Sequence record: NC_061440.1 | Reading direction: 5' to 3' (one strand) | DNA length: 64,000 bases | Shown: in pieces, positions 5,495-61,860 of the stretch | Layout of the letters: the number at the start of each line of letters is the position of its first letter | Numbering within the stretch: the first letter of the stretch is position 1 | Made by a program: the position numbers and the translations under genes | The notes under the pieces: model-generated | What the model saw: only the letters and a program-made list of their open reading frames with translations | Told to the model about the DNA's origin: nothing | The model's database searches: none

Positions 5495-6316
5495 TTAATC
5501 TCCCTTAGCCTCGAACCAGAAGTCCCAGCCTACAGTATTGGTGCCGCTGGACTTAATGGTAAAGCCACCTAACAAGGCGTTCTCGTTCACTGCACTAGTA
5601 CCATCAAGGTTGTAGAGCGTAAACGTCTTAGCCTGGTTCGTTGCCGCATTCAAGAACGTAATCTGAATGCTTAGGCAGCGGTTGATGAATGGGCTGTTGA
5701 AGATAACGTGAATGGTGTCAGTAGTTGATTTGTTCACGATGCGACCCATGTTCTGGGTAAAGCCCGTGTTCATATCGCGGTTGCTACCAATCCATGCGTT
5801 TGGAATCACAGCACCTGTTACAGGGTCAAGTGCTTGCGCTGTTCGATACTCGTCGATAGCAGCATCACGCCCCGGGTTACCAGTAGGACCCGTCGCACCA
5901 GTAGGGCCGACTGCGCCCGTGTTACCAGTAGCGCCGACAGGGCCCGTGTTACCAGTAGGACCGTTACGGCCTCTTGGGCCACGAGGGCCAGGACAACCGT
6001 CTTCACCATCACGTCCGTCACGACCATCAGCACCAGGAAGACCGCGTAAGCCGTCTTTACCCTGCTTGCCTTCACGTCCTGACTTGAGCTGGTCGGCAGT
6101 AGGCAAACCAATAACGTTCGTCTGACTGCCGTCCGGCCAAATGAGTGTTAACGTACCTGTTGTCGTATCGAACTGAGCACCCTGAGCACCTGGAATCTTC
6201 GCAGCTTCTTGCGGACTGATAAACGCGACCGCAGTAGAAGTCTTCTTACCTAGCACTTTACCGACGGGGTCGGTGCCACCGTCGATGAGTGAAGGATTAA
6301 TGCGTGTTAAAGACAT
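5495..6316 (-). CDS. Collagen-like fibre protein with C-terminal gp53-like/lectin-like domain (273 aa)
   Basis: Continuous Gly-X-Y triplets (GREGKQG...GPTGNPG). C-terminal F.SPF...C....GGFTI...WFEAKG tail-fibre end module. Confidence 0.85.
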   Translation of the reverse strand: MSLTRINPSLIDGGTDPVGKVLGKKTSTAVAFISPQEAAKIPGAQGAQFDTTTGTLTLIWPDGSQTNVIGLPTADQLKSGREGKQGKDGLRGLPGADGRDGRDGEDGCPGPRGPRGRNGPTGNTGPVGATGNTGAVGPTGATGPTGNPGRDAAIDEYRTAQALDPVTGAVIPNAWIGSNRDMNTGFTQNMGRIVNKSTTDTIHVIFNSPFINRCLSIQITFLNAATNQAKTFTLYNLDGTSAVNENALLGGFTIKSSGTNTVGWDFWFEAKGD

Positions 6317-11487: not shown

Positions 11488-11979
11488 TTATGGGCGAACC
11501 CAGATTGCGCCAGGTGCGATCTCATTATCAATGGCAGGGTCAGTGTCTTGAACAAACACCTGTACTGCACCAGGATTACCGGGAGCACCTGTTGCGCCAG
11601 TAGGACCAGTTGGACCGGCAGGACCACGATTACCCACATAGCCCTGTTTACCCATCTGACCATCAGAGCCACGAGGGCCTGGGCAGCCGTCAGTACCGCG
11701 ACGACCATCGTTACCCATGAGACCGTCGATACCGTCACGACCAGAAGGACCAACACCACCAGCAGGGCCATAGCCTATGCTGTGAATGGTAGGCAGTCCA
11801 GCAATCTGCAACTTACCAATCGACGGGATATTCAGAGCAAGCACACCCGTAAGAGCATCAAACGAACCGTTGAGTGTGCTGTCATCTTCGGCAGTGTCTA
11901 CTGTCAGACCGCCTTGAGTCGCTACGACAGGACCAGATGCGTTGGTCTTGACTAGCGCTATATCAACTTTTTCTACCAT
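11488..11979 (-). CDS. Collagen-like fibre protein (163 aa)
   Basis: FD..TG.L.L...GLPT head, Gly-X-Y triplets with GCPG, C-terminal VFVQDTDP...GAIWVRP. Confidence 0.85.
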   Translation of the reverse strand: MVEKVDIALVKTNASGPVVATQGGLTVDTAEDDSTLNGSFDALTGVLALNIPSIGKLQIAGLPTIHSIGYGPAGGVGPSGRDGIDGLMGNDGRRGTDGCPGPRGSDGQMGKQGYVGNRGPAGPTGPTGATGAPGNPGAVQVFVQDTDPAIDNEIAPGAIWVRP

Positions 11980-11988: not shown

Positions 11989-12621
11989 TTACGGCCAGGT
12001 AGTGCCTTGATCTTTTGTCGGGTCAACCCAGATTGTTCCAGCGGCAACTGCGCCCGGCTGGGTAGCACTCACGATGATAGACAGACGGCCAGCAGGACCC
12101 GCTGCACCAGTAGGACCAGTAGGACCTGTAGCGCCAGTCTTACCAGTAGGGCCTGTGCCACCACGAGGACCAGTAGGCCCTGTAGGCCCCATAGGACCTG
12201 TGCGACCGTCTGGGCCAGTAGGACCAACAGGTCCAGGCAGACCATCACGGCCATCAGGACCGGGAATACCCTGCTCACCGTCAGGGCCTATCTCACCGTC
12301 ACAGCCCTGTTCACCAGGATTACCGTCACGCCCATCACGACCGTCTTTGCCGTCTGCACCAGTTTCACCACGACCACCCTGACGACCTTCTGGTATGTCA
12401 GCAGCAGTAGGGAAACCATTGACCTTAACAGTCTGTCCGTTAGCAAACTTGAGCGTCAGAATACCGCTGGTGGCATCGAACGACGAGTCGGCAGTAAGCT
12501 CGGACGGCACGTCTGCATCAGAAGGATTGATAGTCAGCGTACCGCGCGAAGCTCTGATTGGAGTGGGCGTAGAAGACGAACCCGCTTGAATGAGGCCCGT
12601 GTTTACTTTAATCAGACCCAT
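11989..12621 (-). CDS. Collagen-like fibre protein (210 aa)
   Basis: Same head motif, long GPT-rich triplet run, C-terminal VSATQP...GTIWVDP. Confidence 0.85.
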
Positions 12622-14063
12622 TACGTTTTCTCCGCTTTAGCAACGATATCCGTATTGTGCACCAGCACATCTCCTACGAAGTAACAGTCAAACGGGTCAA
12701 CATCTATATCAACCGTCTGCACTTGCTCATCAACGCGAACAAATTCAGATACAGCGATAGGTCCTTTACGACCTAAGACAGTTTGACCAATACGAACGTC
12801 ACGCGCAGGAACATAGCGCCATACGGACTCATCATAAATCAATACTGGGTGTTCGTGAGTGAACTTTTGACCGTTGATCACATAGTAATGATCTTCTTGG
12901 CCGAGCTTCAACGCTTTCACCGCAGCGTACACGGTGTTGCCTTTGAGACTAGGCGAAGACCAATTACGAAACTCCTTAGGCTGGTTCGAGTAGCCAAGCA
13001 GCGCATCGCCGACACGCAAGTTCTCTACAGCTTTAGGACCAACGATAGTGTTCACGGTACTGCCAAACACGATACAGCCAGATGTTGCAGTGTTGATAGG
13101 GTTACGCGCCACGACAGTCAGAGCAGAACGCACCGTAACAGTCGGACGTGATGGTTGACCCATATCAGTTACGAGACAGCTAATGGTGCCTTTGATCGAA
13201 CGATCAGCACCTAAGCCTAAACGCAGATAGAAGTTGACAATGCAGGTATTTGTCTCGACAGCATCAAGAGTCACACCCTCTGTGGTCGTGATAGTCCATT
13301 TGTACTTATACGGACCAACGCCACCACGCGCATTGACAGGCAGATACGCCAACGAAGTAAACACATCAGAGCCTTGCACTGTACGTTGACCTACCATGTA
13401 CAGATTAGACACTGACGCAGCAAGAGGTGTGATTGTAGGCAGAGGCGGCGCAGGAGTAACGTTGGCTGTAGGGTACAACCAGACGAACACTTTACCGTCT
13501 GTAGGCTGTGTGCTCGATAGCACTGCTGTAGTGATAGGCGCTGGCCCAGTAGCACCCGTAGCACCAGCAATACAGCTAGGACCATCGTTACCACGAGGAC
13601 CGATAGGCCCTGTAGGACCCGTTGCGCCGTCAGGACCAGTAGGACCGTCAGGACCTTGACGCCCAGTGTCTCCTGGAGGACCGTCTTCACCGTCACGTCC
13701 AGGGTCACCTACAGGACCAGTCTTACCTCTATTGCCTACACCGCCCGGACAACCTTGTTTGCCGGTCTCACCATCACGCCCGTCACGTCCATCTCGACCA
13801 GGAGAACCTGGAGCGCCTCGACGCCCAGGTTTACCTTCGCCAAACATCGCAACAGTGGGCAATCCAGGGATGTTCACCACATCCCCGTTCTGCTTGATGA
13901 ATACCAACACACCTGTCTTGCTGTTAAATCTTACGCTGGCGAGCTGTGTTAATGTTGCCACATCGGAGTTTTCAAACTTAGCCACTCCGTCAACACCGAT
14001 CAATGATTTACCTTCATCGTTCGGTGTTGTTTCGACTTGCGAAAGTTTTAACTGTGTTGTCAT
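12621..14063 (-). CDS. Collagen-like fibre protein with C-terminal Hint (intein-like) domain (480 aa)
   Basis: Gly-X-Y region followed by a beta-rich domain. Then G|CIVFGSTV...[10 protein letters not shown] (Hint block A), FTHEHPVL (block B, T..H), [31 protein letters not shown]|T (blocks F/G). Confidence 0.85.
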
Positions 14064-16480: not shown

Positions 16481-16483
16481 ATT

Positions 16484-45499: not shown

Positions 45500-45561
45500 T
45501 AGTTGCTCCTGAGATTAATCTCGTAAGTTTTCAGATACTAAACAGTCACGGTGCGCGACGA

Positions 45562-46320: not shown

Positions 46321-48354
46321 TTAGCGCAGACGAGCAAGTTTATCAGCGAAGGATGAGCCAGTGGAAGCTGAACTCTGGGAAGAAACAGACTCGAGGTCCT
46401 GATTCAACAGGTCAGCAGCAGTCTGTTGTTTGACTGGTGCAGTGGTAACCTGCTGTTGAACAACTGCCTGGCGGTCGGCACTAACAGTACCAGCAGCGGC
46501 GTCGATCGATTCAGAAATTTCGTTCTGGGCTACTTCTGACTTGCTCATCAGGTCCATCGCTTTTGACAGCGAAGCCGCGAGGAAGTCTTTACCGTGAGCG
46601 ATAAACGCACGTTCAATCAGAGCGCGTGGCTCTTTGAGACCGGCAGCAGTCAGAGAACTCGCCAGAGACTCAACGATTGGGTTACGCACATCACCCCAGA
46701 AGTTTTTGGTAACACCCAGCTGTGCAGCAGACAGCGCAGCGACCAGACGATCAGCGTGAGCTGAGGTAGCTTCTTCGATAGTCGCAGTGACGTTCGAGGT
46801 TGCTTCGTTGATACGCGCGTCGGATTCAGCCACCAGCAGTTTGTCTACCGGCATTTCGAACTGATACGGCATAAAGCCGAACGATTCACAAGTACCAGCA
46901 ACACCAGTCTGATTCAGAGAGTGTGATACGGCACGGATGAAATTATCAGTATCGAAAGATTTAACCGCATTTTCTTCGCCGACTGCATTAGATACAGAAG
47001 CGAGAGTAGCGCGGGCCAGAGGTTCGCCATCGTAGTACATGTGAACAGTGTTCACTTTACCAGCAGCGCGGCTCAGGCTAACGAGTGACGGGTCCAGCGT
47101 GCCGTGGTTGGCTTGCGCAGTGGACAGACTGTCGAAGGTGCGGCTGACGGCCTTACTTTCAGAATCGAAATCGTCTTCGTCATCGAGGTCGAGATCATCT
47201 TCTTCCAGTTCTTCGTCGTCGAGGTCTTCATCTTCGTCGTCATCGCTAGATGATTCGGAATCGAAGTCTTCATCGTCGAGGTCTTCGTCATCCAGATCTT
47301 CGTCGTCGAGGTCTTCCTCATCGAGGTCGTCTTCGTCGAAATCTTCGTCGTCTTCCTCGTCGTCGTCAGAGCTGGATTCAGAATCGAAGTCGTCTTCGTC
47401 TTCTTCCAGGTCTTCGTCATCCAGATCATCTTCATCCAGATCTTCGTCGTCGAGGTCGTCTTCGTCGTCGATATCATCTTCATCATCGTTAGAAGATTCG
47501 GAGTCGATATCGTCTTCGTCCAGATCGTCATCTTCATCGTCAAGGTCATCTTCCTCAACAATGTCGATATCGCTGTCGTCGCCAGATTGAGATTCAATCG
47601 GCTCATCAACCAGCGCGGCAGAACAGTGGGCGCAGAACACTGGCTCTTCATCGGAAGATACAGTGAATGGCTGGTCGCAGTTAGCAGAGCAGCTATAGAT
47701 ATGCGCTTCAACTTCATCGCCAGCAGAAGACAGAGCAGCGATTGCTTCTGGAGCTTCTTGCGGGTCACAGGAAGTAACTTCCTGGCCGGTGTACGGGTCG
47801 AAGTTTGCGGCAGTAGCAGCGTTAAAGCTACCAGTACCAGACACAGCGGTAAACGTGTGTGCGTTGCTCAGTGCCAGTGCGAAGTTGCGTTGTGCAGCTT
47901 CGGCAGTCTCGCCGGTAGCAACCAGACCAACGTGTTCAACCTGTTCGTCAGCAGAAGCTGATTCGGCCAGGAATTGAGTAACGCGTTCGTCAGTGATTTC
48001 GGACAGGTCAGCAGAGCACGATGGGCAGCAGCCCTGAACCAGAGCAGAGCTATCAGAGATAACGTGGCTACCACAACCATCAAGACAGATGGTGTAATGC
48101 GCTTTCACGTCACCAGCAGAAGACTGCGACTGGACTTCGGCTTTCTCAACCAAATCAGGATGCTCTACCAGCAGTTCTTCACCGCCGTTAGGATTGTAAA
48201 GGTCCGCGCCGCTCTGCGAAGCAAAGCCCACACCGGCAGAGTTCCCGAAAATCATCAGGTTCTGACCGAGTGCAGTACGGCGAAAGTTCTCTACTGCCTG
48301 ATTATGGTTTTGACCGACACACAGGATACCCGCGAGTTGGGTAATCTTTGGCAT
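46321..48354 (-). CDS. Prohead scaffold/core-like protein with two Zn-ribbon-like motifs and a ~140-aa acidic tract
   Basis: Probable start MPKITQL after GAGG. Contains C.xxC...CPSC and C.xxC...CAHC pairs and a D/E tract punctuated by (F/I)DSES. Confidence 0.65.
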   Translation of the reverse strand: MPKITQLAGILCVGQNHNQAVENFRRTALGQNLMIFGNSAGVGFASQSGADLYNPNGGEELLVEHPDLVEKAEVQSQSSAGDVKAHYTICLDGCGSHVISDSSALVQGCCPSCSADLSEITDERVTQFLAESASADEQVEHVGLVATGETAEAAQRNFALALSNAHTFTAVSGTGSFNAATAANFDPYTGQEVTSCDPQEAPEAIAALSSAGDEVEAHIYSCSANCDQPFTVSSDEEPVFCAHCSAALVDEPIESQSGDDSDIDIVEEDDLDDEDDDLDEDDIDSESSNDDEDDIDDEDDLDDEDLDEDDLDDEDLEEDEDDFDSESSSDDDEEDDEDFDEDDLDEEDLDDEDLDDEDLDDEDFDSESSSDDDEDEDLDDEELEEDDLDLDDEDDFDSESKAVSRTFDSLSTAQANHGTLDPSLVSLSRAAGKVNTVHMYYDGEPLARATLASVSNAVGEENAVKSFDTDNFIRAVSHSLNQTGVAGTCESFGFMPYQFEMPVDKLLVAESDARINEATSNVTATIEEATSAHADRLVAALSAAQLGVTKNFWGDVRNPIVESLASSLTAAGLKEPRALIERAFIAHGKDFLAASLSKAMDLMSKSEVAQNEISESIDAAAGTVSADRQAVVQQQVTTAPVKQQTAADLLNQDLESVSSQSSASTGSSFADKLARLR

Positions 48355-48431: not shown

Positions 48432-49565
48432 TTAAACTTTTCTGCTATCAATGTCAGCTTGCGGAATATAGCGATTTTCGAAGTATTTATTGACCACTTC
48501 TACTCCGTTTAACGTATAAACGTTACGCATACTATCACCCCAAACCATTAGCTCTGCGAGGGTCGCAAAGTGTTCTGCGGGCACTGTATTTATGGTACGT
48601 GCGTTCAAGCTATCTGGATGGATTTTCTTTCCTCGGATAGCCTGATCGAACTTCATACGGTCAACATTTCGTATCATCGTATGGTCAACAAAGTGCGCCA
48701 ATTCGTGGGTCATTGCATGGCCGAATGAACGGCTATTATAACCCCCGAACAAGTCCACCAACTGCTTTGGACTCATTGAAATTACACCATACAGGAATCC
48801 TGACACGGTATAAGTAGCAATATGTGACCCACCAACATCGTTACCATGTTTAACGATACCCACATATAGGCGTTTAAACGGCAGAGGCACATTAAGACCT
48901 ATGCCAGGCATGACGTTATCCTGAATGTCTTTGAGTACATAGTCAGGAGGACTCACACCTTCCAGCAGGATTTTCTTGCCACCTATACGCAGTTCGTCAG
49001 CACCCAATACTTCAAGATGCACATTGCCACAACGTGGTATCTTCTGGACTGCGTAGTTATTTGGCGTACCACCAGGATAGTTGGCATTTGCATACACCAA
49101 GGCTTTCATATCACCGAACTGCGGCATGTCCATTAGACGACGCTGTTTGGCTTTGAGCGACTCTGGCGTATCTACACCGAACTGATCAAGAGGACCATCG
49201 GCTGGTGTATTTTGTTCGGGCGCTGGAGCTTCTACTTGCTGGGGTTTCGCTTTGACAGGCACGGGCTTCGGCTTGGGTGCAGCAGCTTTCTGCTTTTCCT
49301 CGTAAGGAACGAAGTCGAATCCAGGCTTGAAGAGGGCGTCAGGCTTAGCCGTGAATGGGCGACTCTGCGATACTACGCGGTCACCGTCTTCTCCACTGAT
49401 TGCATAAGCCATGTCGTATTTAGGGTGGGCTATGTAGTACAGGTCGTCACTCACTTTGACCAGACCTACAACCTCACGTGTATGCAGATGCACACCGTTT
49501 GAGATCATAGCGTCTGGTCCAAGATAACGATAGTACGAATAGTCTGCTATGGACATATCGGACAT
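48432..49565 (-). CDS. Zincin metallopeptidase with N-terminal SH3-like paralogous domain
   Basis: HAMTHELAHFVDH (HExxH) plus a downstream PAEHFATLAE third-ligand motif. Probable start at the TAATG overlap (49565). Confidence 0.75.
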   Translation of the reverse strand: MSDMSIADYSYYRYLGPDAMISNGVHLHTREVVGLVKVSDDLYYIAHPKYDMAYAISGEDGDRVVSQSRPFTAKPDALFKPGFDFVPYEEKQKAAAPKPKPVPVKAKPQQVEAPAPEQNTPADGPLDQFGVDTPESLKAKQRRLMDMPQFGDMKALVYANANYPGGTPNNYAVQKIPRCGNVHLEVLGADELRIGGKKILLEGVSPPDYVLKDIQDNVMPGIGLNVPLPFKRLYVGIVKHGNDVGGSHIATYTVSGFLYGVISMSPKQLVDLFGGYNSRSFGHAMTHELAHFVDHTMIRNVDRMKFDQAIRGKKIHPDSLNARTINTVPAEHFATLAELMVWGDSMRNVYTLNGVEVVNKYFENRYIPQADIDSRKV

Positions 49566-50344
49566 TAAGCCATCCGCAGCAGATGTTCTTTGTACGTTGC
49601 AGCACACGCAAATGCTGGATCATCGACCGAGCTACATTCGAAGCCAGTCAACATCTTGCAATCACGATACACCAGACGGCCTGTACGACCATCGAGGTAT
49701 GTAGGCTTATTGAATGCCGTGTGCGAACAGAAGTTACGATGACGCGGTGTAACCAACTGACCACAGATACTGCACTTATATGCCTTGTACGTTGTGCCTT
49801 TAGAGTACGTGTTAAGCTCGCCACTCAGAATACGGTCACAACGCTCCTTGCAGCGTGTACGGTCAAACGCCAGCAGCAGAGTAAGACGCGCATGGTTGCC
49901 ACGGAAGTTTTGCAGCTTCGACAGGTTCGAGTCAAAGATCATGCCCATTGCCTGGCGGTAATCTTTATTGTTGTGCTCGATGAACGTCGGCTTACCAATG
50001 AACGTCTGATATGCAAGACGGCCTTGGTCTGGATTGAATGTCAGCCATTCTTGAAGTGAGAACGCATCACCGTTAGTGTTCGGCAGTTCAGTGATATTCA
50101 CAGGAACAGGCACGATGATATAGTCACGAATATCTCGCGAGGTGTTGTACTGCTCGGCCGCTTTAGGCAGCCACACGTTCACGTCAAGATTAAACGAGCC
50201 TGATTGAATGCCGAAACGCGACGCATCTACACGAATGGATTTAGCATCACGGCTAACATCTTCTTTGTGCATATCAATCGCGTTTAGACCAACAAGGCCC
50301 ATATCCGAGGTATCAAAAGACTCGGAGCGAATGGACTGGTCCAT
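49565..50344 (-). CDS. Prohead maturation protease (HK97/assemblin-like, 259 aa)
   Basis: PN.NGDAF, TF.GKP...EHN, MG.I.D, YS.G, CSICG...CSH, FECSSV.DPAF. Confidence 0.8.
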   Translation of the reverse strand: MDQSIRSESFDTSDMGLVGLNAIDMHKEDVSRDAKSIRVDASRFGIQSGSFNLDVNVWLPKAAEQYNTSRDIRDYIIVPVPVNITELPNTNGDAFSLQEWLTFNPDQGRLAYQTFIGKPTFIEHNNKDYRQAMGMIFDSNLSKLQNFRGNHARLTLLLAFDRTRCKERCDRILSGELNTYSKGTTYKAYKCSICGQLVTPRHRNFCSHTAFNKPTYLDGRTGRLVYRDCKMLTGFECSSVDDPAFACAATYKEHLLRMA

Positions 50345-50778: not shown

Positions 50779-51654
50779 TTAACCTCGCAGCGCACCACGT
50801 GCCCAAGACTTGGCAAGAGCCAGAGTCATACGGCTTGGGTTTTGCAGTTTGACTTCACCTTTATGTACGGCAGTGAATGGCTCATGAGCGTTCTCACCAC
50901 GGCCTGAACGATATGCAGCTTCATTGAAACCGTCGAATAGCGTTACAACCCAGCCCGTGGACTTATCAGAACATTCACCACACGCTTTGTCCCAGCTAAT
51001 CTTACCGCAAGTACGGCCACCAGCATTCACGGCATAACTTACTTGCTCGGTACCTTTATACAGGTCCTGAGATTTCAGCGCCTTGAATGTCACACGAGTA
51101 GAAGATTCGGAGCGTGGCATCATCTTCTCTTTCAGCGCCTCAATGTCCAGAGAACTCCAGAACGATTCAAACAGCGCAGCGAACTTCTGCTCAATAGGCA
51201 GGTCGATTGTGTTGATCTGTGCGATAGTGCTGGAGCTGTCGTTCAGCACACGGTTAAGGAAATAGCCGCCAAGAATTACAGGCATCTGGGTGCCTTGTGT
51301 GCCAGCCGTAAGGCCAGCACGTTTGGCGTACATATCACACATGCCGATAGCAAGACGCGCCAACGTCATGAACGTCTGCTTCTCGGTACTGTTAGCGATC
51401 TCCGTGTAGATACGCGCAGCGATTGCAGGCACTACAGTGCGTTTCGCCACGCTTAGGATATCTTCTGGAGAGATGGCCTGACCGAGTTTCTTCTTGGCAG
51501 CCAGCTCGAAAGCATTAATCAGGCTTGCTTTGTTCGCTGGTGTCAGAGACTCGCTCAACTTGATAGTCGTCTGCTCGGAGCTGTTCACCAGACTCGGCTG
51601 CGGTGCTACCTTCAGTCTGCGGACTCCCGTCGTGTTCAATCGAGCTACTGTCAT
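50779..51654 (-). CDS. Hypothetical protein (291 aa)
   Basis: AGGA SD. Start overlaps the 3' end of the glycosyltransferase gene by 140 nt. Confidence 0.7.
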   Translation of the reverse strand: MTVARLNTTGVRRLKVAPQPSLVNSSEQTTIKLSESLTPANKASLINAFELAAKKKLGQAISPEDILSVAKRTVVPAIAARIYTEIANSTEKQTFMTLARLAIGMCDMYAKRAGLTAGTQGTQMPVILGGYFLNRVLNDSSSTIAQINTIDLPIEQKFAALFESFWSSLDIEALKEKMMPRSESSTRVTFKALKSQDLYKGTEQVSYAVNAGGRTCGKISWDKACGECSDKSTGWVVTLFDGFNEAAYRSGRGENAHEPFTAVHKGEVKLQNPSRMTLALAKSWARGALRG

Positions 51655-52759
51655 TTGTTTCTTCCTGAGTAGGAGCCTGTAGATATTGCAGCAGGCCAGA
51701 GTTCATGATCTCCTCATTCACATCCTGACCACGAAGCGTAGCGAGATGTGCGAGGTAATTGAGTGCGGGTTCGACCATACCCAGATTGCGACAGCCCCAA
51801 TAGGCTATGTCATAACACAGGTCTAAATTAATAGCGGTCTGATCGAACAGGAAACCTTTTGGATTCTGCTTGGTTGCTTCGATACCTTGAACAGCCATAC
51901 CGATAGCATTGATGTTATCGCCGTGTCGGTAGAAGATATCGGCCAGCATCGAATACGCTTCAATGCGGTCAGGACGGAATGCTATGGCGCGATAACACGC
52001 ACACACCGCTTCCTGAGTGAAGCCCTGTTTGTACGTGGCTTTCGCTAGTTCGATGTTGGCGATTGTAACGTAATCCGCCCACTTAGCAATGCCAGCAAGA
52101 CGATCTACTTCACGCCGTGCATCTTCGAGCAAATCAGGACGTTCGTAATACGCAACGGCATAGCAGAGTTCACGCGCATAGTAGAAACTGCAACGGTCAT
52201 CATGCGGATAGTCACCAACATCAAGTCCAAGCTCTAGCAGATAGTTACGGCCTTTGCTGTGGTCTGGATAGTGATCGGTGGCGAACGGAGCTTCAACCGT
52301 TCTGAGTTGCTGTCCAGGCTTGCGCGAGGTCAGCACTTCATGCGCACGATATTTCCAGAAGTAAGAACGACGGCGGTAGGCCTTCATCTGACTGTAGTGG
52401 CTGTCACCATTGCGCATCAGAATCCAAACAGCTTCTGCCTTCTTAATGCCTTGCATTGTGCGCAGCTTCTCAACCCAATCAGGGTCATCAAAACGCTCAT
52501 CAATATCAAGCCACACTACAAGGTCATCTTCGGAGAATGGCGTAGCGGCCAGTTCACGACTTGCACCAAGGTTACGCTCTTGACTAACATCAAACGTGTG
52601 GTAGATGTTAGGGTGCGTGAACGCCGAGATGATGTTTGTGGTTTGGTCTTCGCTGCCTGTATCGACAATGCTAATCGCATCAGCCTTGGCTACGTGCTTC
52701 AACCACTCACTCATATTCTTTTCTTCATTGCGACAGATAGCCGCTACGCAAATTCTCAT
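51515..52759 (-). CDS. Glycosyltransferase family 2 with TPR-like C-terminal repeats (414 aa)
   Basis: RICVAAICRNEE, IVDTGSED.T, RN...SR..A, WLDIDE (DxD), W.YRAHE, HYPD..K.R.YL.L, then helical R..FYYAREL...R.EAY..LA repeats. Confidence 0.88.
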   Translation of the reverse strand: MRICVAAICRNEEKNMSEWLKHVAKADAISIVDTGSEDQTTNIISAFTHPNIYHTFDVSQERNLGASRELAATPFSEDDLVVWLDIDERFDDPDWVEKLRTMQGIKKAEAVWILMRNGDSHYSQMKAYRRRSYFWKYRAHEVLTSRKPGQQLRTVEAPFATDHYPDHSKGRNYLLELGLDVGDYPHDDRCSFYYARELCYAVAYYERPDLLEDARREVDRLAGIAKWADYVTIANIELAKATYKQGFTQEAVCACYRAIAFRPDRIEAYSMLADIFYRHGDNINAIGMAVQGIEATKQNPKGFLFDQTAINLDLCYDIAYWGCRNLGMVEPALNYLAHLATLRGQDVNEEIMNSGLLQYLQAPTQEETNDSSSIEHDGSPQTEGSTAAESGEQLRADDYQVERVSDTSEQSKPD

Positions 52760-52774: not shown

Positions 52775-53692
52775 TTATACTAAAACGTTACCACTATCCC
52801 ACCAGCGCTTACCGTAGATATCAGACACACGGTATTCGAGGATGAGAGGTTGGTCCAGGTCGACTTGTGTTATGTATCGCTGTAGAGAAGGACTCCACAC
52901 TGTTTTCTCCTCAGTGTAAAGCCGTATCTCCAGCTCAACGTCGCCTTGAGAGTTCTTCGGTACGAACGGATGAGAATAGTCCCCATCGAAACCCGCACCA
53001 AGAGAGTCGTCGAAGTAAGTGAATGCGCGAACTTCTTCACCAGTGTTGATGATCGTGGGTGCATACACTTGACGGTTATAATACGCAGTATAGTCGGCAA
53101 CAGTTGTCTGCCAAACTGTACGGCGCTTATAGATACGCGTCACGCCTTTGCTGTCTGTCTCCGCACGATATTGGTTGTAGTACCAAGTTATCTGTGCGAA
53201 CTTAACAGGCTTCAACGGTGTTTGACCAGACGCATATTTCATGAACGGCTTCGCAGTGAAACGGTGATATGTCTTCTGCGTGTTCAAGCGATAAAGCAGA
53301 ACCTGATACGTGTACCACTGATAAACATCGAGGGTAATCGTACCTGAGTCTGATTGCTGCGTACCGTTAGTCAGGATGTATGCGAAACAGTCCGTACCAA
53401 CGTAGCCGCTGCGTGGGTTATAGAGGAACGCATCGCTAAAGTTGTTCAGTTGCACCGTGCCTACCATCGGGTCATTGACCTTGATCGCAGAAAGGCGCCA
53501 ACCCCTTTGAGCTGGCACCTTATCAAGCACACCCTCAGTCGGGCTATGCAACGTCACTTCATCACGAGCGCCTTGTAAGATCTTTTCGAGCGGTAACTCG
53601 GTCTTACCCGAGTTACGCACTCGCACCGTAAGGTTCGGAGCTAATGGTTTGTAATTGCGCCAATAGTCGAACGTACAAGGCAAAGAGAGCAT
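52775..53692 (-). CDS. Ig-like (Big_9/cadherin-like) domain virion protein (305 aa)
   Basis: P..GTV.L...AFLYNPRSGYVGTD.F.Y.LT.G...S..GTITL.V. Confidence 0.65.
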   Translation of the reverse strand: MLSLPCTFDYWRNYKPLAPNLTVRVRNSGKTELPLEKILQGARDEVTLHSPTEGVLDKVPAQRGWRLSAIKVNDPMVGTVQLNNFSDAFLYNPRSGYVGTDCFAYILTNGTQQSDSGTITLDVYQWYTYQVLLYRLNTQKTYHRFTAKPFMKYASGQTPLKPVKFAQITWYYNQYRAETDSKGVTRIYKRRTVWQTTVADYTAYYNRQVYAPTIINTGEEVRAFTYFDDSLGAGFDGDYSHPFVPKNSQGDVELEIRLYTEEKTVWSPSLQRYITQVDLDQPLILEYRVSDIYGKRWWDSGNVLV

Positions 53693-53694: not shown

Positions 53695-55641
53695 TTACTC
53701 CAGTTTGTACTTGCTCTTAAACTCTGCGAGTCCCATAACAGGGATGCCTTTGTCCATCGCTTTCTGGAGTTTCGCAGAACCAGAGCCAGGGTCTTTTGCG
53801 ATCAGTATCGTCGTATCGGCTTTCATGCTATCAGAAGCAGTACCACCAAGTTCAACGATACGCTTCATCAGGTCGCGATCACGAATGCCTGTGAATGCTA
53901 CGTTAACGCCTTTTAGCTTGGAGCTAACCACTTTCACTTTCTTCGGAGCAACGAGAGTCACGCCCATATTCGCGGCCATCATGTATGACTTAACAGCAGC
54001 TTCTGCGATGGCAGGACCGAGCTTGTCGATGCCGTGCATACCACTAATCTTGAGAACAAGGTCTGCGGTATATCCACGCTTGAGGTAATACTCAAGGTTA
54101 GGAATGGCGTCAACAACTTTGTCGAACGTAGTGTTAGCCCCGCGCATGAAGAATGACGCTGTAGCTTTTAGCCACGTATTCATCGGCACACCAGCTTTCA
54201 ACGCTTTGAGATCTTTAGCCAGTTGACGACCGCGAGAGTCGCCTACGATTTCACGCAGCGCACTCATTGAAGCACTAAACAACTGCTCAGGAGTTTTGAT
54301 GCCTGACTCAACAAGCATCTTACAAGTACCAGGTCCCGTGTTCGCAACGTCCAGTCCTTTCAAGAACGAGCCAAGCATACGAGCATCAGCAGCAGACGAC
54401 TTCGTTTTGACGACGAACTCTACACCACTGATCTTGTACGGCACGCCAGGCAACTTAGGCTTCTTAGCGGGCTTGAGAATCTCCATGATGTATGGGATTA
54501 CCTTACCGCTTCGAATCAACTTAACCTTAGCACCAGGGCCCAGCGGGCGTTTAGGGCCAAGCACTGCACCTTTCTTCTTCGGCTTGAGATAGCCGTGCTC
54601 AACGTAGAAACCGTTGTGCGCAGAAGCACGTTCGACAGTTACACCACCAGGCATAACAGTAGGTGGGAACAGTGCGACAGGAGCCAGTACGCCGTACTTG
54701 GACTCTTGATAGATAACGTCTTTGACAGTCACGATCACCGTGTCCGCTTCAACGTTCATCTTGAACTTAAAGGCATGTCGTGGGTTGCTTGCCGTAGCTT
54801 TCGGCGTGGCCACATCACGAGTCATCACGATGCCGTCGAGTTCATACTTCGCTTTGGCTATACGCTTGTCTAACCAAGGAATGAGTTCTTCCTGATTGTC
54901 GAAACGCAATGGACCAAAGTGACGCACTACCTCGAATCCCCACTTGTCTAACAGTTTGAACTGTTTCGACTGCGAGAGCGTGGCACCTTTACCACCGATG
55001 ATACCGAAGCATACCATGTGGACGTACTTGAACTCTTTAGAAGTTTCAAAGTTACGGATGAGTCCTGACGCAGCGTTACGTGCGGCCTTGAAGCGACCAC
55101 CAGCAGATTCGTGCAGCTTCGCCATAAAGGTCTTGTAGGGAATCAGCGCTTCACAGCGTATAACCACCTGACCCTTTTCTGGGATTTTCTGAGGAATGCG
55201 CATGGCCGGAAGGTGCTGAGACACATCCTTACCGTGAGTAGCATCGCCGCGAGTAAGAGCACGAACAGGCACACCCTTCTCGTAAACGATTTCAATACTC
55301 AAGCCATCGAGCTTATCTGTCAGAATCCAGTCAACGTCTTCGGCCAGAGCCTTAGACAGTTGCTTACCACCGAGCGTATACTGATCGAGACTCGCCATAG
55401 GAACAGGCAGCTTAACATCGGAATCATCACGAGCACCGATCTTACGAGCCAGCTTGGACTTAGGCCAGCGCGTGTCGATATAGCGACGAATATGGTCATA
55501 GACCGCATCCGATATCAAGCCTTCCGAATCAGTGTGGAACGCATCATCAAGATGCGCCACAAGTTTCGTTGTCTGCGTCAGATTGAGCGTGTCCAGAATC
55601 TTATCAGGATTCCTTTCGAGCCGCTTCAATGAGATTTGCAT
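53695..55641 (-). CDS. ligA: NAD+-dependent DNA ligase with C-terminal BRCT
   Basis: Domain Ia ISDAVYD, M.SLD, motif I TDKLDGLS, A.TRGD...G.DV, RNAASG, DGIV, AFKF, RSGKVIPYI, BRCT AFTG.RD...GG...T..L....GS.KLQKA...GIP. Probable start MQISL after a GGAG SD. Confidence 0.92.
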   Translation of the reverse strand: MQISLKRLERNPDKILDTLNLTQTTKLVAHLDDAFHTDSEGLISDAVYDHIRRYIDTRWPKSKLARKIGARDDSDVKLPVPMASLDQYTLGGKQLSKALAEDVDWILTDKLDGLSIEIVYEKGVPVRALTRGDATHGKDVSQHLPAMRIPQKIPEKGQVVIRCEALIPYKTFMAKLHESAGGRFKAARNAASGLIRNFETSKEFKYVHMVCFGIIGGKGATLSQSKQFKLLDKWGFEVVRHFGPLRFDNQEELIPWLDKRIAKAKYELDGIVMTRDVATPKATASNPRHAFKFKMNVEADTVIVTVKDVIYQESKYGVLAPVALFPPTVMPGGVTVERASAHNGFYVEHGYLKPKKKGAVLGPKRPLGPGAKVKLIRSGKVIPYIMEILKPAKKPKLPGVPYKISGVEFVVKTKSSAADARMLGSFLKGLDVANTGPGTCKMLVESGIKTPEQLFSASMSALREIVGDSRGRQLAKDLKALKAGVPMNTWLKATASFFMRGANTTFDKVVDAIPNLEYYLKRGYTADLVLKISGMHGIDKLGPAIAEAAVKSYMMAANMGVTLVAPKKVKVVSSKLKGVNVAFTGIRDRDLMKRIVELGGTASDSMKADTTILIAKDPGSGSAKLQKAMDKGIPVMGLAEFKSKYKLE

Positions 55642-55681: not shown

Positions 55682-57598
55682 CTAGCTGGCGATTGGGTCT
55701 TTGTTGACAGGATAATCTTCCACCATATCGATCACGCGATTGAACAGCTTAGGCGTCATATCTTTCACATGTTCGGCATAGTCAAAGAGGTTTTGTTTAC
55801 GCGCACGGTTCACACGGACCTGACGCACTTCATCAGGGCTGTTGGTGATATCGTACAGCGTATAGACCACGATATTATCAGAGGCGTTGTGCGTACTAAC
55901 ACGGACGATAACCCAATCACGATTGAGTTTGGCATCTGCTCTGAATCGCAGCACGTCACCTTCTTCCGCTTCTTCTGCGCGAGCATTAGGAGTGGATTTG
56001 TTGGCGGCAGCAATCTTCTTCGCAGTCTCTTTAGCTTCGGCTTCTGCGGCAGCAACGTCAGAGTCTTGGTCTTCCTCTGCGTCATTCTCATCTACCGCGT
56101 CAGTAGCGTCGGCTTCTGGGTCATCATCGGAGGCTTCGTCGTCTTCTGCTCCAGAATCTTCTGAGTCAGCTCCTTCGTCGTCAGCACCTTCATCATCCAC
56201 GGATTCGGAATCATCGTCGGCAGTGTCGTCCTCATTTGATTCATCATCAACATCTGGATCGCTATCGTCAACGTCTTCTTCTGCATCTGGGTCTTCCTCT
56301 TCCTCTTCCTCTTCACCGTCAGTAGAGTCTTCTTCCTCTTCTTCTGGCGCAGGTTTAGCAGGCTTGGCCCCTTTCTTAGGACGCACTTTAGGTGGCGGAG
56401 TATCTTCTTCGTCGTCTTCTGGTTCGTCAATATCAGAAAGGTCGAGCGCAGGTTCTTCGTGGTCTTCTGAATCATCACCACCAAACAGCGAACCTACAGA
56501 ATCTTCGATGTTGAACATGTCGCCTGCAAACGGGCTGCGAGATAACACGTCTTCGAGTTTCTGCTCATCGAAGTCCAGATCGATTTCGACTTCTTCAATC
56601 GCATCGTCCAGTTCTTCGTGCTCGATGACACGCACACGCTTACCACGTTTGTCGATACCATCTTCGTAGACAGTGCGCACTTCTGCTTTAGGCGCTTCGA
56701 TCTCACCGGACTTAACCTTGCTACGCAGGTCTTTCATCTCGGCAGCACGGGCCTGTTGCTTTTTGCGTGTCTCTTTCGCCAGCTCTTTACGCTGCTGCTT
56801 TTGCTCAAGAATTTTCGCGTTGTTGGCGAGGCGTACAGCTTCTTCCTCTTCCAGTTGCGAGCGCTTACGATGACGACGCACCTGCTTGCGATATGCTTTC
56901 AGTGTATCAATGTCCACATCACCTTTCGGCCAATCATTGAAAGGCAGAATGTTGGTGTCGTGAACAAGCAGATCGTATTGTGCGTCATCAATCTTAACGA
57001 ACAGGCCTTCGGTGTTAATGACCACACCACCTTTACCTTGTCGCAAGAAGCGTACACCGATCATGTCGTTTTTGTACAGCTTGAGCATACCCTTAGAAGT
57101 CTTAATAGGATATTCCATGCTCGGAACCATACGCCACTGATAGTTATCGAAGTTAACACCGTACACAGCCTCAGACTTCACAGACTTAGGCGAAAAGCGG
57201 GCAGCATCGAACTGCACACGATTGATTTGACGCTGCATGGTTTTAGCGCCAGCAGTCTTCGTGCGCGTTTCACGTTGAACAACATCGGGGACCTTGCGCA
57301 GTTTGGAGCTACGCTCAATCAGGAACAGGCCTGTTGTTTTATCGAGAGGGAAGTCAACGTGAGGCATGTCGGCAAAGATTAATGTGTAGCGACCGCCATT
57401 GCGCAGCGGGAGAATGCCGAAAGTATCTCCATCACGAATCATACGCTTATGAGTTCGTTGGGATACTTCCTTGCCGCGTGAACCTTTATACTTCATCCAC
57501 GCGTACTTCGTTACTGCATCTTCATGAGATGCGGACACGGAAAGTATCATGTTCTTGTCTCTATGTTGTCTGTCACTCATTGAAATTAGCTTACGCAA
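55682..57598 (-). CDS. Hypothetical protein with two SH3-like paralogous domains, a coiled coil and an acidic tract (~620-638 aa)
   Basis: Probable start at ATG 57580 or 57550 (MILSVSAS). Contains WMKYKG...GDTFGI...YTL...D.P..DF.LD and a D/E-rich linker. Confidence 0.75.
   Translation of the reverse strand: MRKLISMSDRQHRDKNMILSVSASHEDAVTKYAWMKYKGSRGKEVSQRTHKRMIRDGDTFGILPLRNGGRYTLIFADMPHVDFPLDKTTGLFLIERSSKLRKVPDVVQRETRTKTAGAKTMQRQINRVQFDAARFSPKSVKSEAVYGVNFDNYQWRMVPSMEYPIKTSKGMLKLYKNDMIGVRFLRQGKGGVVINTEGLFVKIDDAQYDLLVHDTNILPFNDWPKGDVDIDTLKAYRKQVRRHRKRSQLEEEEAVRLANNAKILEQKQQRKELAKETRKKQQARAAEMKDLRSKVKSGEIEAPKAEVRTVYEDGIDKRGKRVRVIEHEELDDAIEEVEIDLDFDEQKLEDVLSRSPFAGDMFNIEDSVGSLFGGDDSEDHEEPALDLSDIDEPEDDEEDTPPPKVRPKKGAKPAKPAPEEEEEDSTDGEEEEEEEDPDAEEDVDDSDPDVDDESNEDDTADDDSESVDDEGADDEGADSEDSGAEDDEASDDDPEADATDAVDENDAEEDQDSDVAAAEAEAKETAKKIAAANKSTPNARAEEAEEGDVLRFRADAKLNRDWVIVRVSTHNASDNIVVYTLYDITNSPDEVRQVRVNRARKQNLFDYAEHVKDMTPKLFNRVIDMVEDYPVNKDPIAS
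57583..57590 (-). promoter_or_regulatory. GCTAATTT motif (candidate late promoter)
   Basis: Directly after a hairpin terminator and upstream of the ATG starts at 57580 and 57550. Confidence 0.6.
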
Positions 57599-61817: not shown

Positions 61818-61846
61818 GAAACGAAAAAGGGCGGCCGAAGCCACCC
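61818..61846 (-). terminator. Rho-independent terminator
   Basis: GGGTGGC-TTCG-GCCGCCC-TTTTT. Confidence 0.85.
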
Positions 61847-61860
61847 TGTGAGGAATAGGC

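What the first reader, a model, noticed from the sequence alone, without database searches (positions are those of the whole stretch)
51515..52759. GT2-TPR glycosyltransferase among head genes: possible glycosylated 'hairy' virion
Seen: an intact GT2 (DTGSxD, DxD) with TPR-like tail between the Ig-domain gene and the prohead protease cluster, and in the same window GPT/GAT-rich collagens. Known: GT2-TPR enzymes are typically protein or peptide glycosyltransferases (SunS, flagellin GTs). GxT-rich collagen-like BclA proteins of Bacillus and Clostridioides spores are O-glycosylated (SgtA for BclA3). Some mycobacteriophages glycosylate their virions. DNA-modifying phage GTs are usually of other families and sit with replication genes. 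Inference: a phage protein-glycosylation system that decorates fibres or capsid, analogous to the spore nap.
Basis: partly seen in the sequence, partly recalled or inferred. Interest (0 to 1): 0.7.

Follow-up and report, generated by a model that had tools for sequence, protein, structure and literature searches.

The report
SgtA-like glycosyltransferase of a hairy jumbo phage
This jumbo Erwinia phage carries a soluble enzyme related end to end to the Clostridioides difficile enzyme that puts sugars on collagen-like spore fibres, and relatives of this enzyme in many other phages sit next to threonine-rich collagen-like fibre genes, so the phage probably sugar-coats its own collagen-like tail fibres.

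Summary
Window 51515-52759 (-) is an intact 414-aa gene, gp150 of Erwinia phage pEa_SNUABM_22 (Alexandravirus, 265 kb, 100% identical). It has a GT-A/GT2 domain with invariant DTGSxD and DxD motifs, a 10-helix TPR-like domain and a disordered acidic tail. Four GPT/GAT-containing collagen-like genes lie 38-46 kb away in the tail-fibre module.

- The family profile aligns end to end with the C. difficile 358-aa TPR-GT2 that sits immediately upstream of a bclA3-type gene, i.e. SgtA (hhalign 100%, E 6e-60).
- SgtA is a proven beta-O-GlcNAc transferase for Thr in collagen repeats.
- Among distant viral homologs, 14 of 19 de-replicated loci carry a GXT collagen-like gene within 10 kb on the same strand, against 0 of 64 control loci (p about 4e-12).
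- 19 of 120 viral loci chosen only for a (GPT)3 run carry the enzyme, against 0 of 62 controls.

Caveats: in this clade the gene is unlinked from the collagen genes and is syntenic with the prohead protease, and no glycan has been observed. DNA, LPS and glycocin roles are disfavoured. The RefSeq label 'beta-1,4-glycosyltransferase' has no support. I rate it a new member of a known kind, of moderately high interest.

The parts
51515..52759 (-). gp150: SgtA-like GT2-TPR glycosyltransferase gene (414 aa plus stop)
52265..52759 (-). GT-A (GT2) catalytic domain, aa 1 to about 165, with DTGSxD (aa 33-38) and DxD (aa 85-87)
   Evidence: Pfam PF00535; invariant columns; AF2 strand/helix pattern; phmmer hit to the GmaR GT domain, E 1.4e-5
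51698..52240 (-). TPR-like helical repeat domain, aa 174-354 (10 helices). It begins with the family signature FYYAREL (aa 191-197).
   Evidence: AF2; Foldseek hits to ThuS/SunS, CTPR, OGT-TPR and GmaR; phmmer hits to consensus TPR; R189, Y193, R196, E197 and W227 are invariant
51518..51670 (-). Disordered acidic Ser/Thr-rich C-terminal tail, aa 364-414. It is absent from Salmondvirus and more distant homologs.
   Evidence: pLDDT below 50; composition 14 D+E, 3 K+R, 14 S+T; alignment
5495..6316 (-). gp106: collagen-like tail fibre protein (24 GXY triplets, 7 with Thr at Y). Predicted acceptor.
11488..11979 (-). gp110: collagen-like tail fibre protein (23 triplets, 3 with Thr at Y). Predicted acceptor.
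11989..12621 (-). gp111: collagen-like virion protein (34 triplets, 11 with Thr at Y). Predicted acceptor.
12621..14063 (-). gp112: collagen-like virion protein (29 triplets, 6 with Thr at Y) with a C-terminal Hint-like domain. Predicted acceptor.
52775..53692 (-). gp151: Ig-like (Big_9) protein immediately upstream. Syntenic with the GT in Salmonella phage Sen-NF. Alternative acceptor candidate.
50779..51558 (-). gp149: unknown protein whose start overlaps the GT stop by 44 nt. No informative fold match.
49565..50344 (-). gp147: prohead maturation protease, the syntenic anchor of the GT across the extended jumbo clade
   Evidence: PHROG 18299; synteny in Sen-NF, PaBG and Lu11; 22 of 26 distant protease-anchored loci carry the GT
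61828..61847 (-). Terminator-like hairpin after tail sheath gene gp155. Probable start boundary of the transcription unit that contains the GT.
   Evidence: consensus scan only
45545..45559 (-). Next terminator-like site downstream, after gp144
   Evidence: consensus scan only

Best explanation
gp150 is a soluble, cytoplasmic, metal-dependent GT-A (GT2) protein O-glycosyltransferase of the SgtA type. Its TPR-like domain recruits a protein substrate. Its catalytic domain transfers a sugar from a host UDP-sugar onto Thr (or Ser) at the Y position of G-X-T triplets. The donor may be UDP-GlcNAc, by analogy with SgtA, but this is not predicted by any result here. The most likely acceptors are the four paralogous collagen-like tail-fibre/virion proteins gp106, gp110, gp111 and gp112, modified during late infection before or during fibre assembly. 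The result would be virions whose collagen-like fibres carry O-glycans.

Shown: an intact catalytic motif set, the fold, end-to-end homology to the C. difficile sgtA-position enzyme, family-wide linkage to GXT collagen genes, and co-occurrence with four collagen-like genes throughout the clade.

Inferred: the activity, the donor, the acceptor identity in this phage, the timing, and any link between these fibres and the 'hairy' tail morphology.
For: (1) Motifs and fold. PF00535 scores above its cut-off. DTGSxD and DxD are invariant. The AF2 model has pLDDT 86 and shows GT-A followed by 10 TPR-like helices. The best full-length PDB matches are the peptide glycosyltransferases ThuS and SunS (E about 1e-12), then OGT-TPR and GmaR. 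The GmaR GT domain also matches by sequence.

(2) Homology to SgtA. The C. difficile 358-aa TPR-GT2 (P0376) lies immediately upstream of a 712-aa protein with 153 GXY triplets, 75% of them with Thr at Y. This matches the published sgtA-bclA3 description (PMC7157674). hhalign of the phage family profile against P0376 gives probability 100%, E 5.8e-60, over 337 columns. BLASTP of the window protein alone gives E 2e-9.

(3) Published biochemistry. SgtA adds beta-O-GlcNAc to Thr of collagen-repeat peptides and is Mn2+ dependent (PMC7157674).

(4) Association. 27 of 51 distant viral loci have a collagen-like run within 10 kb, which is 14 of 19 de-replicated clusters. Controls give 0 of 88 loci and 0 of 64 clusters. 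Fisher p is 5e-15 for loci and 4e-12 for clusters.

(5) Reverse association. 19 of 120 (GPT)3-selected viral loci carry a full-length GT2-TPR, all on the same strand as the collagen gene, against 0 of 62 ThyA-anchored controls.

(6) Bacterial genomes. 52 of 79 loci have a GXT collagen run. In 34 of 73 it is the immediate downstream gene, with a median gap of 21 nt.

(7) Phage setting. The neighbouring genes are real phage structural genes. The isolated phage DSL-LC01 shows collagen-collagen-x-x-GT on one strand.

(8) Clade co-occurrence. The GT and the collagen-like fibre family are found in the same records: 65 records have the fibre, all from the organism groups that make up the 69 GT records. 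PaBG and Lu11 keep four collagen-like paralogs.

(9) Localisation. There is no TM segment, so the enzyme is cytoplasmic, like SgtA and GmaR.
Against: In this phage and its whole jumbo clade the GT is not next to the collagen genes: 0 of 25 own-clade loci and 0 of 26 distant protease-anchored loci have collagen within 10 kb. Instead it is syntenic with the prohead protease and overlaps gp149, which would fit a head-related target.

The phage collagen runs have only 13-32% Thr at Y, against 75% in the BclA3-type protein.

Co-occurrence within the clade is not phylogenetically independent.

Profile A1 includes some clostridial sequences, which inflates the hhalign score; the pairwise E of 2e-9 is the independent figure.

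No glycan, transcript or proteomic data exist for gp150 or the fibres. PaBG virion proteomics (14 proteins; Table 1 was not readable) does not mention it in the text I could read.
Confidence: 0.55

Rival explanations
1. gp150 is a protein O-glycosyltransferase, but its acceptors are head or other virion proteins rather than the collagen-like fibres. Candidates are the Ig-like gp151, gp149/gp148, gp144 or the major capsid protein. This would resemble capsid and tail-tube glycosylation in mycobacteriophages.
For: The order ligase-x-GT-x-x-prohead protease-...-MCP is conserved in Sen-NF, PaBG and Lu11. 22 of 26 distant protease-anchored jumbo loci carry the GT. There is a 44-nt overlap with gp149, and genes are packed tightly from the ligase to gp146. 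No terminator-like site appears between the sheath gene and gp144. In L068 the GT is followed by a protein matching head-decoration/Ig-like families. Mycobacteriophage capsid glycosylation is summarised in PMC12619734.
Against: The family-wide association is with GXT collagen-like genes, not with capsid genes. A non-structural gene (NAD-ligase) sits in the same block, so position alone does not imply a head role. gp149 has no glycan-related or informative fold.
Confidence: 0.2
2. gp150 modifies a host molecule, either an envelope polysaccharide/LPS or a host protein such as flagellin. It would then be a takeover or superinfection-exclusion function.
For: There is a weak PHROG 841 (GtrB-like O-antigen conversion) hit on aa 1-143, E 2e-5. 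GmaR glycosylates flagellin (PMC9638930). The literature habitually assigns phage GTs near fibre genes to LPS modification (PMC7029224).
Against: The protein has no TM segment (maximum Kyte-Doolittle score 0.87). No GtrA/GtrC-like partners appear in the annotation. The GtrB-like hit covers only the generic GT-A core. The TPR domain and SgtA homology point to a protein acceptor. The gene is conserved as a core syntenic gene in phages of Erwinia, Dickeya, Salmonella, Yersinia, Pseudomonas and a cyanobacterium, whose envelopes differ.
Confidence: 0.1
3. gp150 glycosylates phage DNA (hydroxymethyl-pyrimidine hypermodification) to evade restriction.
For: It lies one gene from an NAD-dependent DNA ligase. 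Some phage GTs hypermodify DNA (Pyle 2024, as cited in PMC12619734).
Against: The only ThyA-family gene in the genome (gp042) scores as a canonical thymidylate synthase: PF00303 E 1e-56, PHROG 160, and best PDB hits to E. coli-type ThyA. No dCMP or dUMP hydroxymethylase appears among the top hits. A TPR domain is a protein-binding module. The closest relatives act on peptides or proteins.
Confidence: 0.05
4. gp150 is a glycocin-type S-glycosyltransferase (SunS/ThuS-like) that matures a small secreted peptide.
For: The best full-length structural matches are ThuS (7msk) and SunS (7msn), E about 1e-12.
Against: Identity is only 12-15% and TM-score about 0.5. No precursor peptide, C39-peptidase ABC transporter or thiol-disulfide oxidoreductase genes are evident among the neighbours. 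By sequence the protein is closer to SgtA.
Confidence: 0.03

Closest known systems
SgtA of Clostridioides difficile (O-GlcNAc transferase for the exosporium collagen-like protein BclA3; PMC7157674)
   Same: Both have an N-terminal GT-A/GT2 domain followed by C-terminal TPRs in a core of about 360 aa. They are homologous end to end (hhalign 100%, E 6e-60; BLASTP E 2e-9). Both keep the DxD motif and the FYYxREL signature at the start of the TPR domain. Both are soluble. In both cases the genome encodes GXT collagen-like surface fibres.
   Different: The phage gene is 38-46 kb from its putative substrates, whereas sgtA is immediately upstream of bclA3. The phage protein has an extra 50-aa acidic disordered tail. 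Its candidate substrates are short collagen runs (23-34 triplets, 13-32% Thr at Y) in virion fibres, not a long run with 75% Thr in a spore protein. Donor sugar and activity are untested.
GmaR of Listeria monocytogenes (bifunctional flagellin O-GlcNAc transferase and MogR anti-repressor; PMC9638930)
   Same: Both have a GT domain of about 180 aa followed by a TPR domain. There is a direct sequence hit to the GmaR GT domain (E 1.4e-5) and a Foldseek hit to its TPR part.
   Different: gp150 has no linker or anti-repressor domains (414 aa against 637 aa). There is no flagellin context.
SunS/ThuS glycocin S-glycosyltransferases (PDB 7msn, 7msk)
   Same: They are the best full-length structural matches, with a GT-A domain plus a helical repeat substrate-binding region.
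   Different: Identity is only 12-15% and the domain orientation differs (rmsd about 13 A). gp150 has no glycocin gene cluster.
Mycobacteriophage virion glycosylation (Freeman et al. 2023, known to me only through PMC12619734; the paper itself is not held)
   Same: A phage-encoded GT sits among structural genes, and the predicted outcome is a glycosylated virion.
   Different: The reported targets there are the C-termini of capsid and tail-tube subunits. No collagen-like acceptor is reported. I could not check which enzyme families are involved.
GtrB-type and T4-type phage glycosyltransferases (O-antigen conversion; DNA glucosylation)
   Same: They are phage-encoded sugar transferases, and GtrB shares the generic GT-A core.
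   Different: gp150 has no membrane anchor, no Gtr partners, no hydroxymethyl-base pathway, and it has a TPR domain.

Membership tests
GT2 / GT-A fold glycosyltransferases | Pfam PF00535 above the gathering score | tested here: met
   31.5 bits against 23.3, aa 5-118
GT2 / GT-A fold glycosyltransferases | Nucleotide-binding and DxD metal-binding motifs intact | tested here: met
   D33, T34, G35, S36, D38, D85 and D87 are invariant in 28 sequences
GT2 / GT-A fold glycosyltransferases | GT-A fold | tested here: met
   AF2 pLDDT above 90 over aa 1-165; Foldseek hits to TarS, ArnC, SunS and ThuS
GT2 / GT-A fold glycosyltransferases | Sugar-transfer activity | not testable with these tools
   No biochemical data
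SgtA-like TPR-containing GT2 protein O-glycosyltransferases | N-terminal GT-A plus C-terminal TPR repeats, core of about 360 aa, soluble | tested here: met
   SgtA is described as 358 aa, GT-A plus 4 TPR (PMC7157674)
SgtA-like TPR-containing GT2 protein O-glycosyltransferases | End-to-end sequence homology to the C. difficile sgtA-position protein | tested here: met
   hhalign probability 100%, E 5.8e-60, 337 columns. BLASTP 25% over 281 aa, E 2e-9. Identity of P0376 established by species, length and the downstream collagen gene.
SgtA-like TPR-containing GT2 protein O-glycosyltransferases | Gene adjacent to a GXT-rich collagen-like gene | tested here: not met
   The nearest collagen-like gene is about 38 kb away. 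The feature is met in 14 of 19 distant viral clusters and 34 of 73 bacterial loci.
SgtA-like TPR-containing GT2 protein O-glycosyltransferases | GXT collagen-like protein encoded in the same genome | tested here: met
   Four genes with 27 Thr-at-Y triplets in all
SgtA-like TPR-containing GT2 protein O-glycosyltransferases | Transfers beta-O-GlcNAc from UDP-GlcNAc to Thr of collagen repeats | not testable with these tools
   Known for SgtA only
SunS/ThuS glycocin S-glycosyltransferases | Structural similarity over GT and helical domains | tested here: met
   Foldseek E 8e-13 to 5e-12, TM about 0.5
SunS/ThuS glycocin S-glycosyltransferases | Clustered with a glycocin precursor, a C39-ABC exporter and thiol-disulfide oxidoreductases | tested here: not met
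   No such families among the neighbours or in the genome annotation
GmaR-type bifunctional O-GlcNAc transferase | C-terminal linker plus anti-repressor domain | tested here: not met
   The protein ends in a 50-aa disordered tail. GmaR architecture from PMC9638930.
GtrB-like bactoprenol glucosyltransferase (O-antigen conversion) | C-terminal transmembrane helices and GtrA/GtrC partners | tested here: not met
   Maximum KD(19) 0.87; the PHROG 841 hit covers only aa 1-143; no partner genes are annotated
Phage DNA glycosyltransferases | Genome encodes a pyrimidine hydroxymethylase that supplies the acceptor base | tested here: inconclusive
   The only ThyA-family gene looks like a canonical ThyA. 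Sequence alone cannot fully exclude hydroxymethylase activity.

The most novel reading that the evidence does not exclude
SgtA-like GT2-TPR enzymes and GXT collagen-like fibres may form a widespread, so far unrecognised virion O-glycosylation module of tailed phages. It would occur in 'hairy' jumbo myoviruses of plant-pathogenic enterobacteria and pseudomonads, freshwater actinophages, gut phages and siphoviruses. If so, many phage fibres would be glycoproteins built on the same chemistry as the Bacillus/Clostridioides spore nap. In the jumbo clade the enzyme would have become a core morphogenesis gene, unlinked from its substrates.
Probability: 0.4. Interest if true: 0.75.

Novelty: new member of a known kind. 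Interest (0 to 1): 0.62.

Why it matters
Virion glycosylation has so far been demonstrated in only a few phages (mycobacteriophages). There it affects antibody recognition, which matters for phage therapy.

If SgtA-type enzymes glycosylate collagen-like fibres, a large set of phages would have glycoprotein fibres. That set includes biocontrol candidates against fire blight (Erwinia) and soft rot (Dickeya). Consequences could include changes in adsorption, environmental stability and triple-helix stability: Thr glycosylation is a known stabiliser of hydroxyproline-free collagens (my own knowledge, not checked here).

The result also corrects a misleading database label ('beta-1,4-glycosyltransferase'). 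It offers an alternative to the habitual reading of fibre-linked phage GTs as DNA- or LPS-modifying enzymes. Finally, it gives a concrete and cheaply testable prediction: HexNAc or hexose on GXT peptides of four named virion proteins.

Tried and rejected
1. gp149, which overlaps the GT. I built an alignment of homologs, an AF2 model (pLDDT 76) and ran Foldseek against PDB. No match had E below 1e-3, so this was a dead end. gp149 is not recognisably glycan-related.

2. NCBIfam scan of the GT. Only sub-threshold generic GT2/TPR hits appeared.

3. Names in the large protein databases were uninformative.

4. PaBG virion proteomics. The GT is not mentioned in the text I could read, and the table was not readable.

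5. The DNA-modification hypothesis. I searched the whole genome for a ThyA or hydroxymethylase homolog. The single hit behaves as ThyA, so I rejected this as unlikely.

6. The GtrB/LPS hypothesis. I rejected it because there is no TM segment and no partner genes.

7. The sigma-70 promoter scan is uninformative: 12 sites found against 16.7 expected. The phage has its own sigma factor.

8. Freeman 2023 (PMC10527164) is not held, so I could not compare enzyme families with the mycobacteriophage systems.

9. Co-occurrence of the GT and collagen-like fibres within the clade is perfect but phylogenetically non-independent, so I gave it little weight.

10. My simple ORF caller probably undercounts adjacency in bacterial loci (34 of 73). 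The six-frame count (52 of 79) is the more robust figure.
Full report
IDENTITY OF THE WINDOW. The window is 100% identical to Erwinia phage pEa_SNUABM_22 (NC_061440.1 / MZ443785.1; genus Alexandravirus). This is a 265,146-bp jumbo myovirus of Erwinia amylovora, and the window covers record positions 62001-126000. The flagged ORF, window 51515-52759 on the minus strand, is gp150 (YP_010299569.1). RefSeq labels it 'beta-1,4-glycosyltransferase', a label that matches the description of PHROG 13126. Nothing I found supports that linkage specificity.

OBSERVATION. The ORF is intact and encodes 414 aa. Pfam Glycos_transf_2 matches aa 5-118 above the gathering score. In an alignment of 28 homologs down to 22% identity, D33-T-G-S-x-D38 and D85-x-D87 are invariant. 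So are W135, H140-E141, H163, R171, R189, Y193, R196-E197 and W227.

An AlphaFold2 model built on that alignment is confident (mean pLDDT 86; above 90 for most of aa 1-360). It shows three parts: a GT-A domain (aa 1 to about 165), ten helices forming a TPR-like solenoid (aa 174-354), and a disordered acidic Ser/Thr-rich tail (aa 364-414). The tail is missing from Salmondvirus and more distant homologs. There is no hydrophobic segment; the maximum Kyte-Doolittle 19-residue mean is 0.87.

The neighbours on the same strand, in transcription order, are:
- tail sheath gp156/gp155
- gp154
- gp153 (KMPT-N domain)
- NAD-dependent DNA ligase gp152
- Ig-like gp151
- the GT, gp150
- gp149, whose start overlaps the GT stop by 44 nt
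- gp148
- prohead protease gp147
- gp146 (KMPT-N domain)
- gp145
- gp144
- major capsid protein gp143
.

Four collagen-like genes are present and match Pfam Collagen (E about 1e-14). They are gp106, gp110, gp111 and gp112, with 24, 23, 34 and 29 G-X-Y triplets. Each has a GPT/GAT-rich C-terminal half. They are the only collagen-like genes in the genome and lie 38-46 kb from the GT, in the tail-fibre module.

WHAT THE ENZYME RESEMBLES. By structure, the best full-length PDB matches are the peptide S-glycosyltransferases ThuS and SunS (Foldseek E 8e-13 to 5e-12, about 370 aligned columns). After them come consensus TPR proteins, the TPR domain of human OGT, TarS, ArnC and the TPR part of GmaR. 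By sequence, the N-terminus matches the GT domain of Listeria GmaR (E 1.4e-5) and aa 237-300 match consensus TPRs. GmaR is a flagellin O-GlcNAc transferase with the same GT-then-TPR order (PMC9638930).

A profile search over 1.8 billion representative proteins finds 3,898 proteins at E below 1e-30. Many are about 360 aa and match end to end. This is therefore a large family with a fixed two-domain architecture.

LINK TO SgtA. The literature (PMC7157674) describes C. difficile SgtA as follows:
- 358 aa, with an N-terminal GT-A domain and four C-terminal TPRs
- encoded immediately upstream of bclA3
- shown in vitro to add beta-O-GlcNAc from UDP-GlcNAc to Thr residues of BclA3 collagen-repeat peptides
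- Mn2+ dependent

Starting from a Clostridioides MAG homolog returned by my genome scan, I recovered a cluster of 259 sequences of a 358-aa 'tetratricopeptide repeat-containing glycosyltransferase family 2 protein' of C. difficile. In complete C. difficile genomes this gene is followed 66 nt later by a 712-aa protein with 153 G-X-Y triplets, 75% of them with Thr at Y, mostly GAT and GPT. That is the published sgtA-bclA3 arrangement.

The phage-family profile aligns with this protein over 337 columns, covering query 4-363 and target 2-356, at probability 100% and E 5.8e-60. The window protein alone gives BLASTP 25% identity over 281 residues, E 2e-9, extending into the TPR domain. The FYYxREL motif that opens the TPR domain is shared. 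The profile contains a few clostridial sequences, so the pairwise value is the conservative figure.

GUILT BY ASSOCIATION, WITH CONTROLS. I scanned IMG/VR with the family alignment. Besides the 25 own-clade loci, 51 distant loci (26-33% identity) were returned with 10-kb flanks.
- 27 of the 51 contain a collagen-like run of at least 8 non-Gly-rich G-X-Y triplets. In 26 of these, at least 40% of the Y positions are Thr or Ser.
- In the gene-level listing for 49 of these loci the collagen-like gene is on the GT's strand, apart from one extra Gly/Ala-rich run in L068, and in several cases it is directly adjacent: gaps of 3, 19, 176, 429 and 466 nt.
- After DNA-level de-replication this is 14 of 19 clusters.

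Two control sets were fetched the same way. Loci anchored on distant relatives of the prohead protease gave 0 of 26 (514 kb). Loci anchored on distant relatives of ThyA gave 0 of 62 (1,056 kb). Together that is 0 of 64 clusters. Fisher p is 5e-15 for loci and 4e-12 for clusters.

The reverse test used viral stretches chosen only because they encode (GPT)3G. Of 120 such stretches (1,087 kb), 19 carry a full-length GT-plus-TPR match (E 1e-24 to 1e-75). All 19 are on the collagen strand, at a median distance of 2.4 kb. The ThyA controls gave 0 of 62.

The neighbours of these distant homologs match portal, major head, head decoration, tape measure, minor tail and tail fibre families, so they are genuine tailed phages. 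In cultured or deposited records, Actinomycetia phage DSL-LC01 has collagen-collagen-x-x-GT on one strand, and a fecal phage contig has a collagen-like run 180 nt upstream of the GT.

In bacterial genomes (mostly Clostridia MAGs), 52 of 79 loci have a GXT collagen run. In 34 of 73 it is the next gene downstream, with a median gap of 21 nt. One further relative sits beside an endospore-appendage (A_ENA) gene, close to Collagen and C1q genes.

THE SITUATION IN THIS CLADE. Here the picture differs.
- The GT is never within 10 kb of a collagen-like gene: 0 of 25 own-clade and 0 of 26 more distant jumbo loci.
- It keeps a fixed place upstream of the prohead protease. The order ligase-(x)-GT-x-x-protease-...-MCP holds in Salmonella phage Sen-NF, Pseudomonas phages PaBG and Lu11 (GT identity 25-28%), and in 22 of 26 distant protease-anchored IMG/VR loci.
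- The collagen-like fibre family has the same distribution as the GT in the phage database: Erwinia 48, Dickeya 8, Pseudomonas 5, and Yersinia, Alcaligenes, Salmonella and NCTB 1 each.
- PaBG and Lu11 keep four collagen-like paralogs. The 34- and 23-triplet helix lengths are conserved.

This co-occurrence fits the hypothesis, but it is not phylogenetically independent evidence.

The clade (Lu11, PaBG, Y3, JA phages, AD1) is described in the literature as 'hairy Myoviridae', with hair-like fibres on the tail (PMC6143709). Whether the hairs are the collagen-like proteins is unknown.

Terminator-like hairpins occur after the sheath gene (61847-61828) and after gp144 (45559-45545), with none convincing in between. 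Genes from the ligase to gp146 are separated by -44 to +15 nt. This suggests co-transcription with head-assembly genes, but it rests on a consensus scan only.

RIVALS.
1. A protein GT acting on head or other virion proteins. Synteny supports it, and I cannot exclude it (confidence 0.2).
2. Host envelope or host protein modification. The protein has no membrane anchor and no Gtr partners. The family signature is a protein-binding TPR. The gene is a core syntenic gene in phages of hosts with different envelopes (confidence 0.1).
3. DNA glycosylation. The genome's only ThyA-family gene (gp042, annotated hypothetical) behaves as a canonical thymidylate synthase. I found no sugar-nucleotide genes in the annotation, which is sparse (confidence 0.05).
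4. Glycocin maturation. The resemblance to SunS/ThuS is structural only, and there is no glycocin cluster (confidence 0.03).

MECHANISM PROPOSED. gp150 is made in the infected cell and is probably not a virion component. It would use its TPR solenoid to hold unassembled or assembling collagen-like fibre subunits. It would transfer a sugar from a host UDP-sugar, through the DxD-bound metal, to Thr at the Y position of G-X-T triplets. These triplets are clustered in the C-terminal half of each collagen run and number 27 over the four proteins. Everything after 'is made in the infected cell' is inference from homology and association. The donor (UDP-GlcNAc in SgtA) is not predicted by my data.

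NOVELTY. The gene and its generic GT annotation are public. Papers in the searchable library interpret fibre-linked phage GTs as DNA- or LPS-modifying (PMC10202952, PMC7029224). I found none that links SgtA-type enzymes to phage collagen-like fibres. That search covers open-access text only. I therefore file gp150 as a new member of a known kind: an SgtA-like protein O-glycosyltransferase paired with a GXT collagen substrate, in a new setting, the phage virion. The family-wide phage association is the more interesting product.

LIMITS. There are no experimental data on glycans. Collagen detection is a regular-expression criterion. Gene calling in fetched loci is crude. IMG/VR loci are metagenomic. 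The controls sample other genomic neighbourhoods, one structural and one metabolic, but not every possible one.

Noticed in passing
window 12621-14063 (-), gp112, aa about 330-470: This collagen-like virion protein ends in a Hint-type domain (sub-threshold Pfam PT-HINT E 9e-5 and Hint_2 E 9e-4). The domain starts at a Cys and ends in ...VHNT. This suggests autoproteolytic processing of a fibre protein.
   Followed up: partly
window 5864-6079, 11563-11769, 12082-12387 and 13575-13835; L423 (PaBG) and L424 (Lu11): The four collagen-like paralogs keep nearly fixed triple-helix lengths across very divergent phages. 34 and 23 triplets are identical in pEa22, PaBG and Lu11. A conserved G-x-x-G-C-x-G with a single Cys sits mid-helix. 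This looks like a length ruler or a disulfide knot.
   Followed up: partly
window 48432-49565 (gp146) and 55682-57550 (gp153): Two proteins with KMPT-N domains (KTSC/metallopeptidase N-terminal fusion domain; E 1.5e-31 and 8e-17) flank the ligase-GT-protease block. gp153 is 25% Asp+Glu. Their function is unknown.
   Followed up: no
window 46321-48354 (-), gp145: It is annotated 'ATPase' (PHROG 20988), but it has 25% Asp+Glu, only 4% Lys+Arg and no Pfam hit. It sits between the prohead protease and the MCP. Its composition and position look more like a scaffold or internal head protein than an ATPase.
   Followed up: no
window 53695-55641 (-), gp152: A full-length NAD-dependent DNA ligase (adenylation, OB, HhH and BRCT domains) is embedded between tail and head genes. 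It is syntenic there from Erwinia phages to PaBG and Lu11.
   Followed up: partly
outside the window: NC_061440.1 25904-27001 (L006): gp042 is annotated hypothetical but is a ThyA-family protein (PF00303 E 1e-56). It is about 100 aa longer than the solved E. coli-type thymidylate synthases it matches (365 against 264 aa), and it is shared with PaBG gp250.
   Followed up: partly
window 50779-51558 (-), gp149: Its annotated start is a TTG that overlaps the 3' end of the GT by 44 nt. A longer ATG-initiated ORF (to 51654) also exists. The protein is conserved (62% mean column identity) but has no fold match. Its C-terminal part weakly matches PaBG gp261 (E 2e-6).
   Followed up: partly
L425 (Actinomycetia phage DSL-LC01), locus 10433-20941: Near the GT2-TPR and the collagen genes lie a 'tryptophan halogenase'-annotated gene, a UDP-galactopyranose mutase, a second glycosyltransferase and two methyltransferases. 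This hints at a more elaborate fibre glycan in that phage.
   Followed up: no
L009/L010 (metagenomic Firmicute-like contigs): The start of a 357-aa family member overlaps the end of an upstream A_ENA (endospore appendage) gene, with Collagen and C1q-domain genes about 4-5 kb away. This fits glycosylation of appendage tip fibrils.
   Followed up: no
one search hits, e.g. P0061 (2742 aa, 7 matched stretches) and P0070: Some members of the family are giant proteins with up to seven tandem GT2-TPR modules. L370 (a Clostridioides MAG) has two family genes in tandem, of 365 and 671 aa.
   Followed up: no
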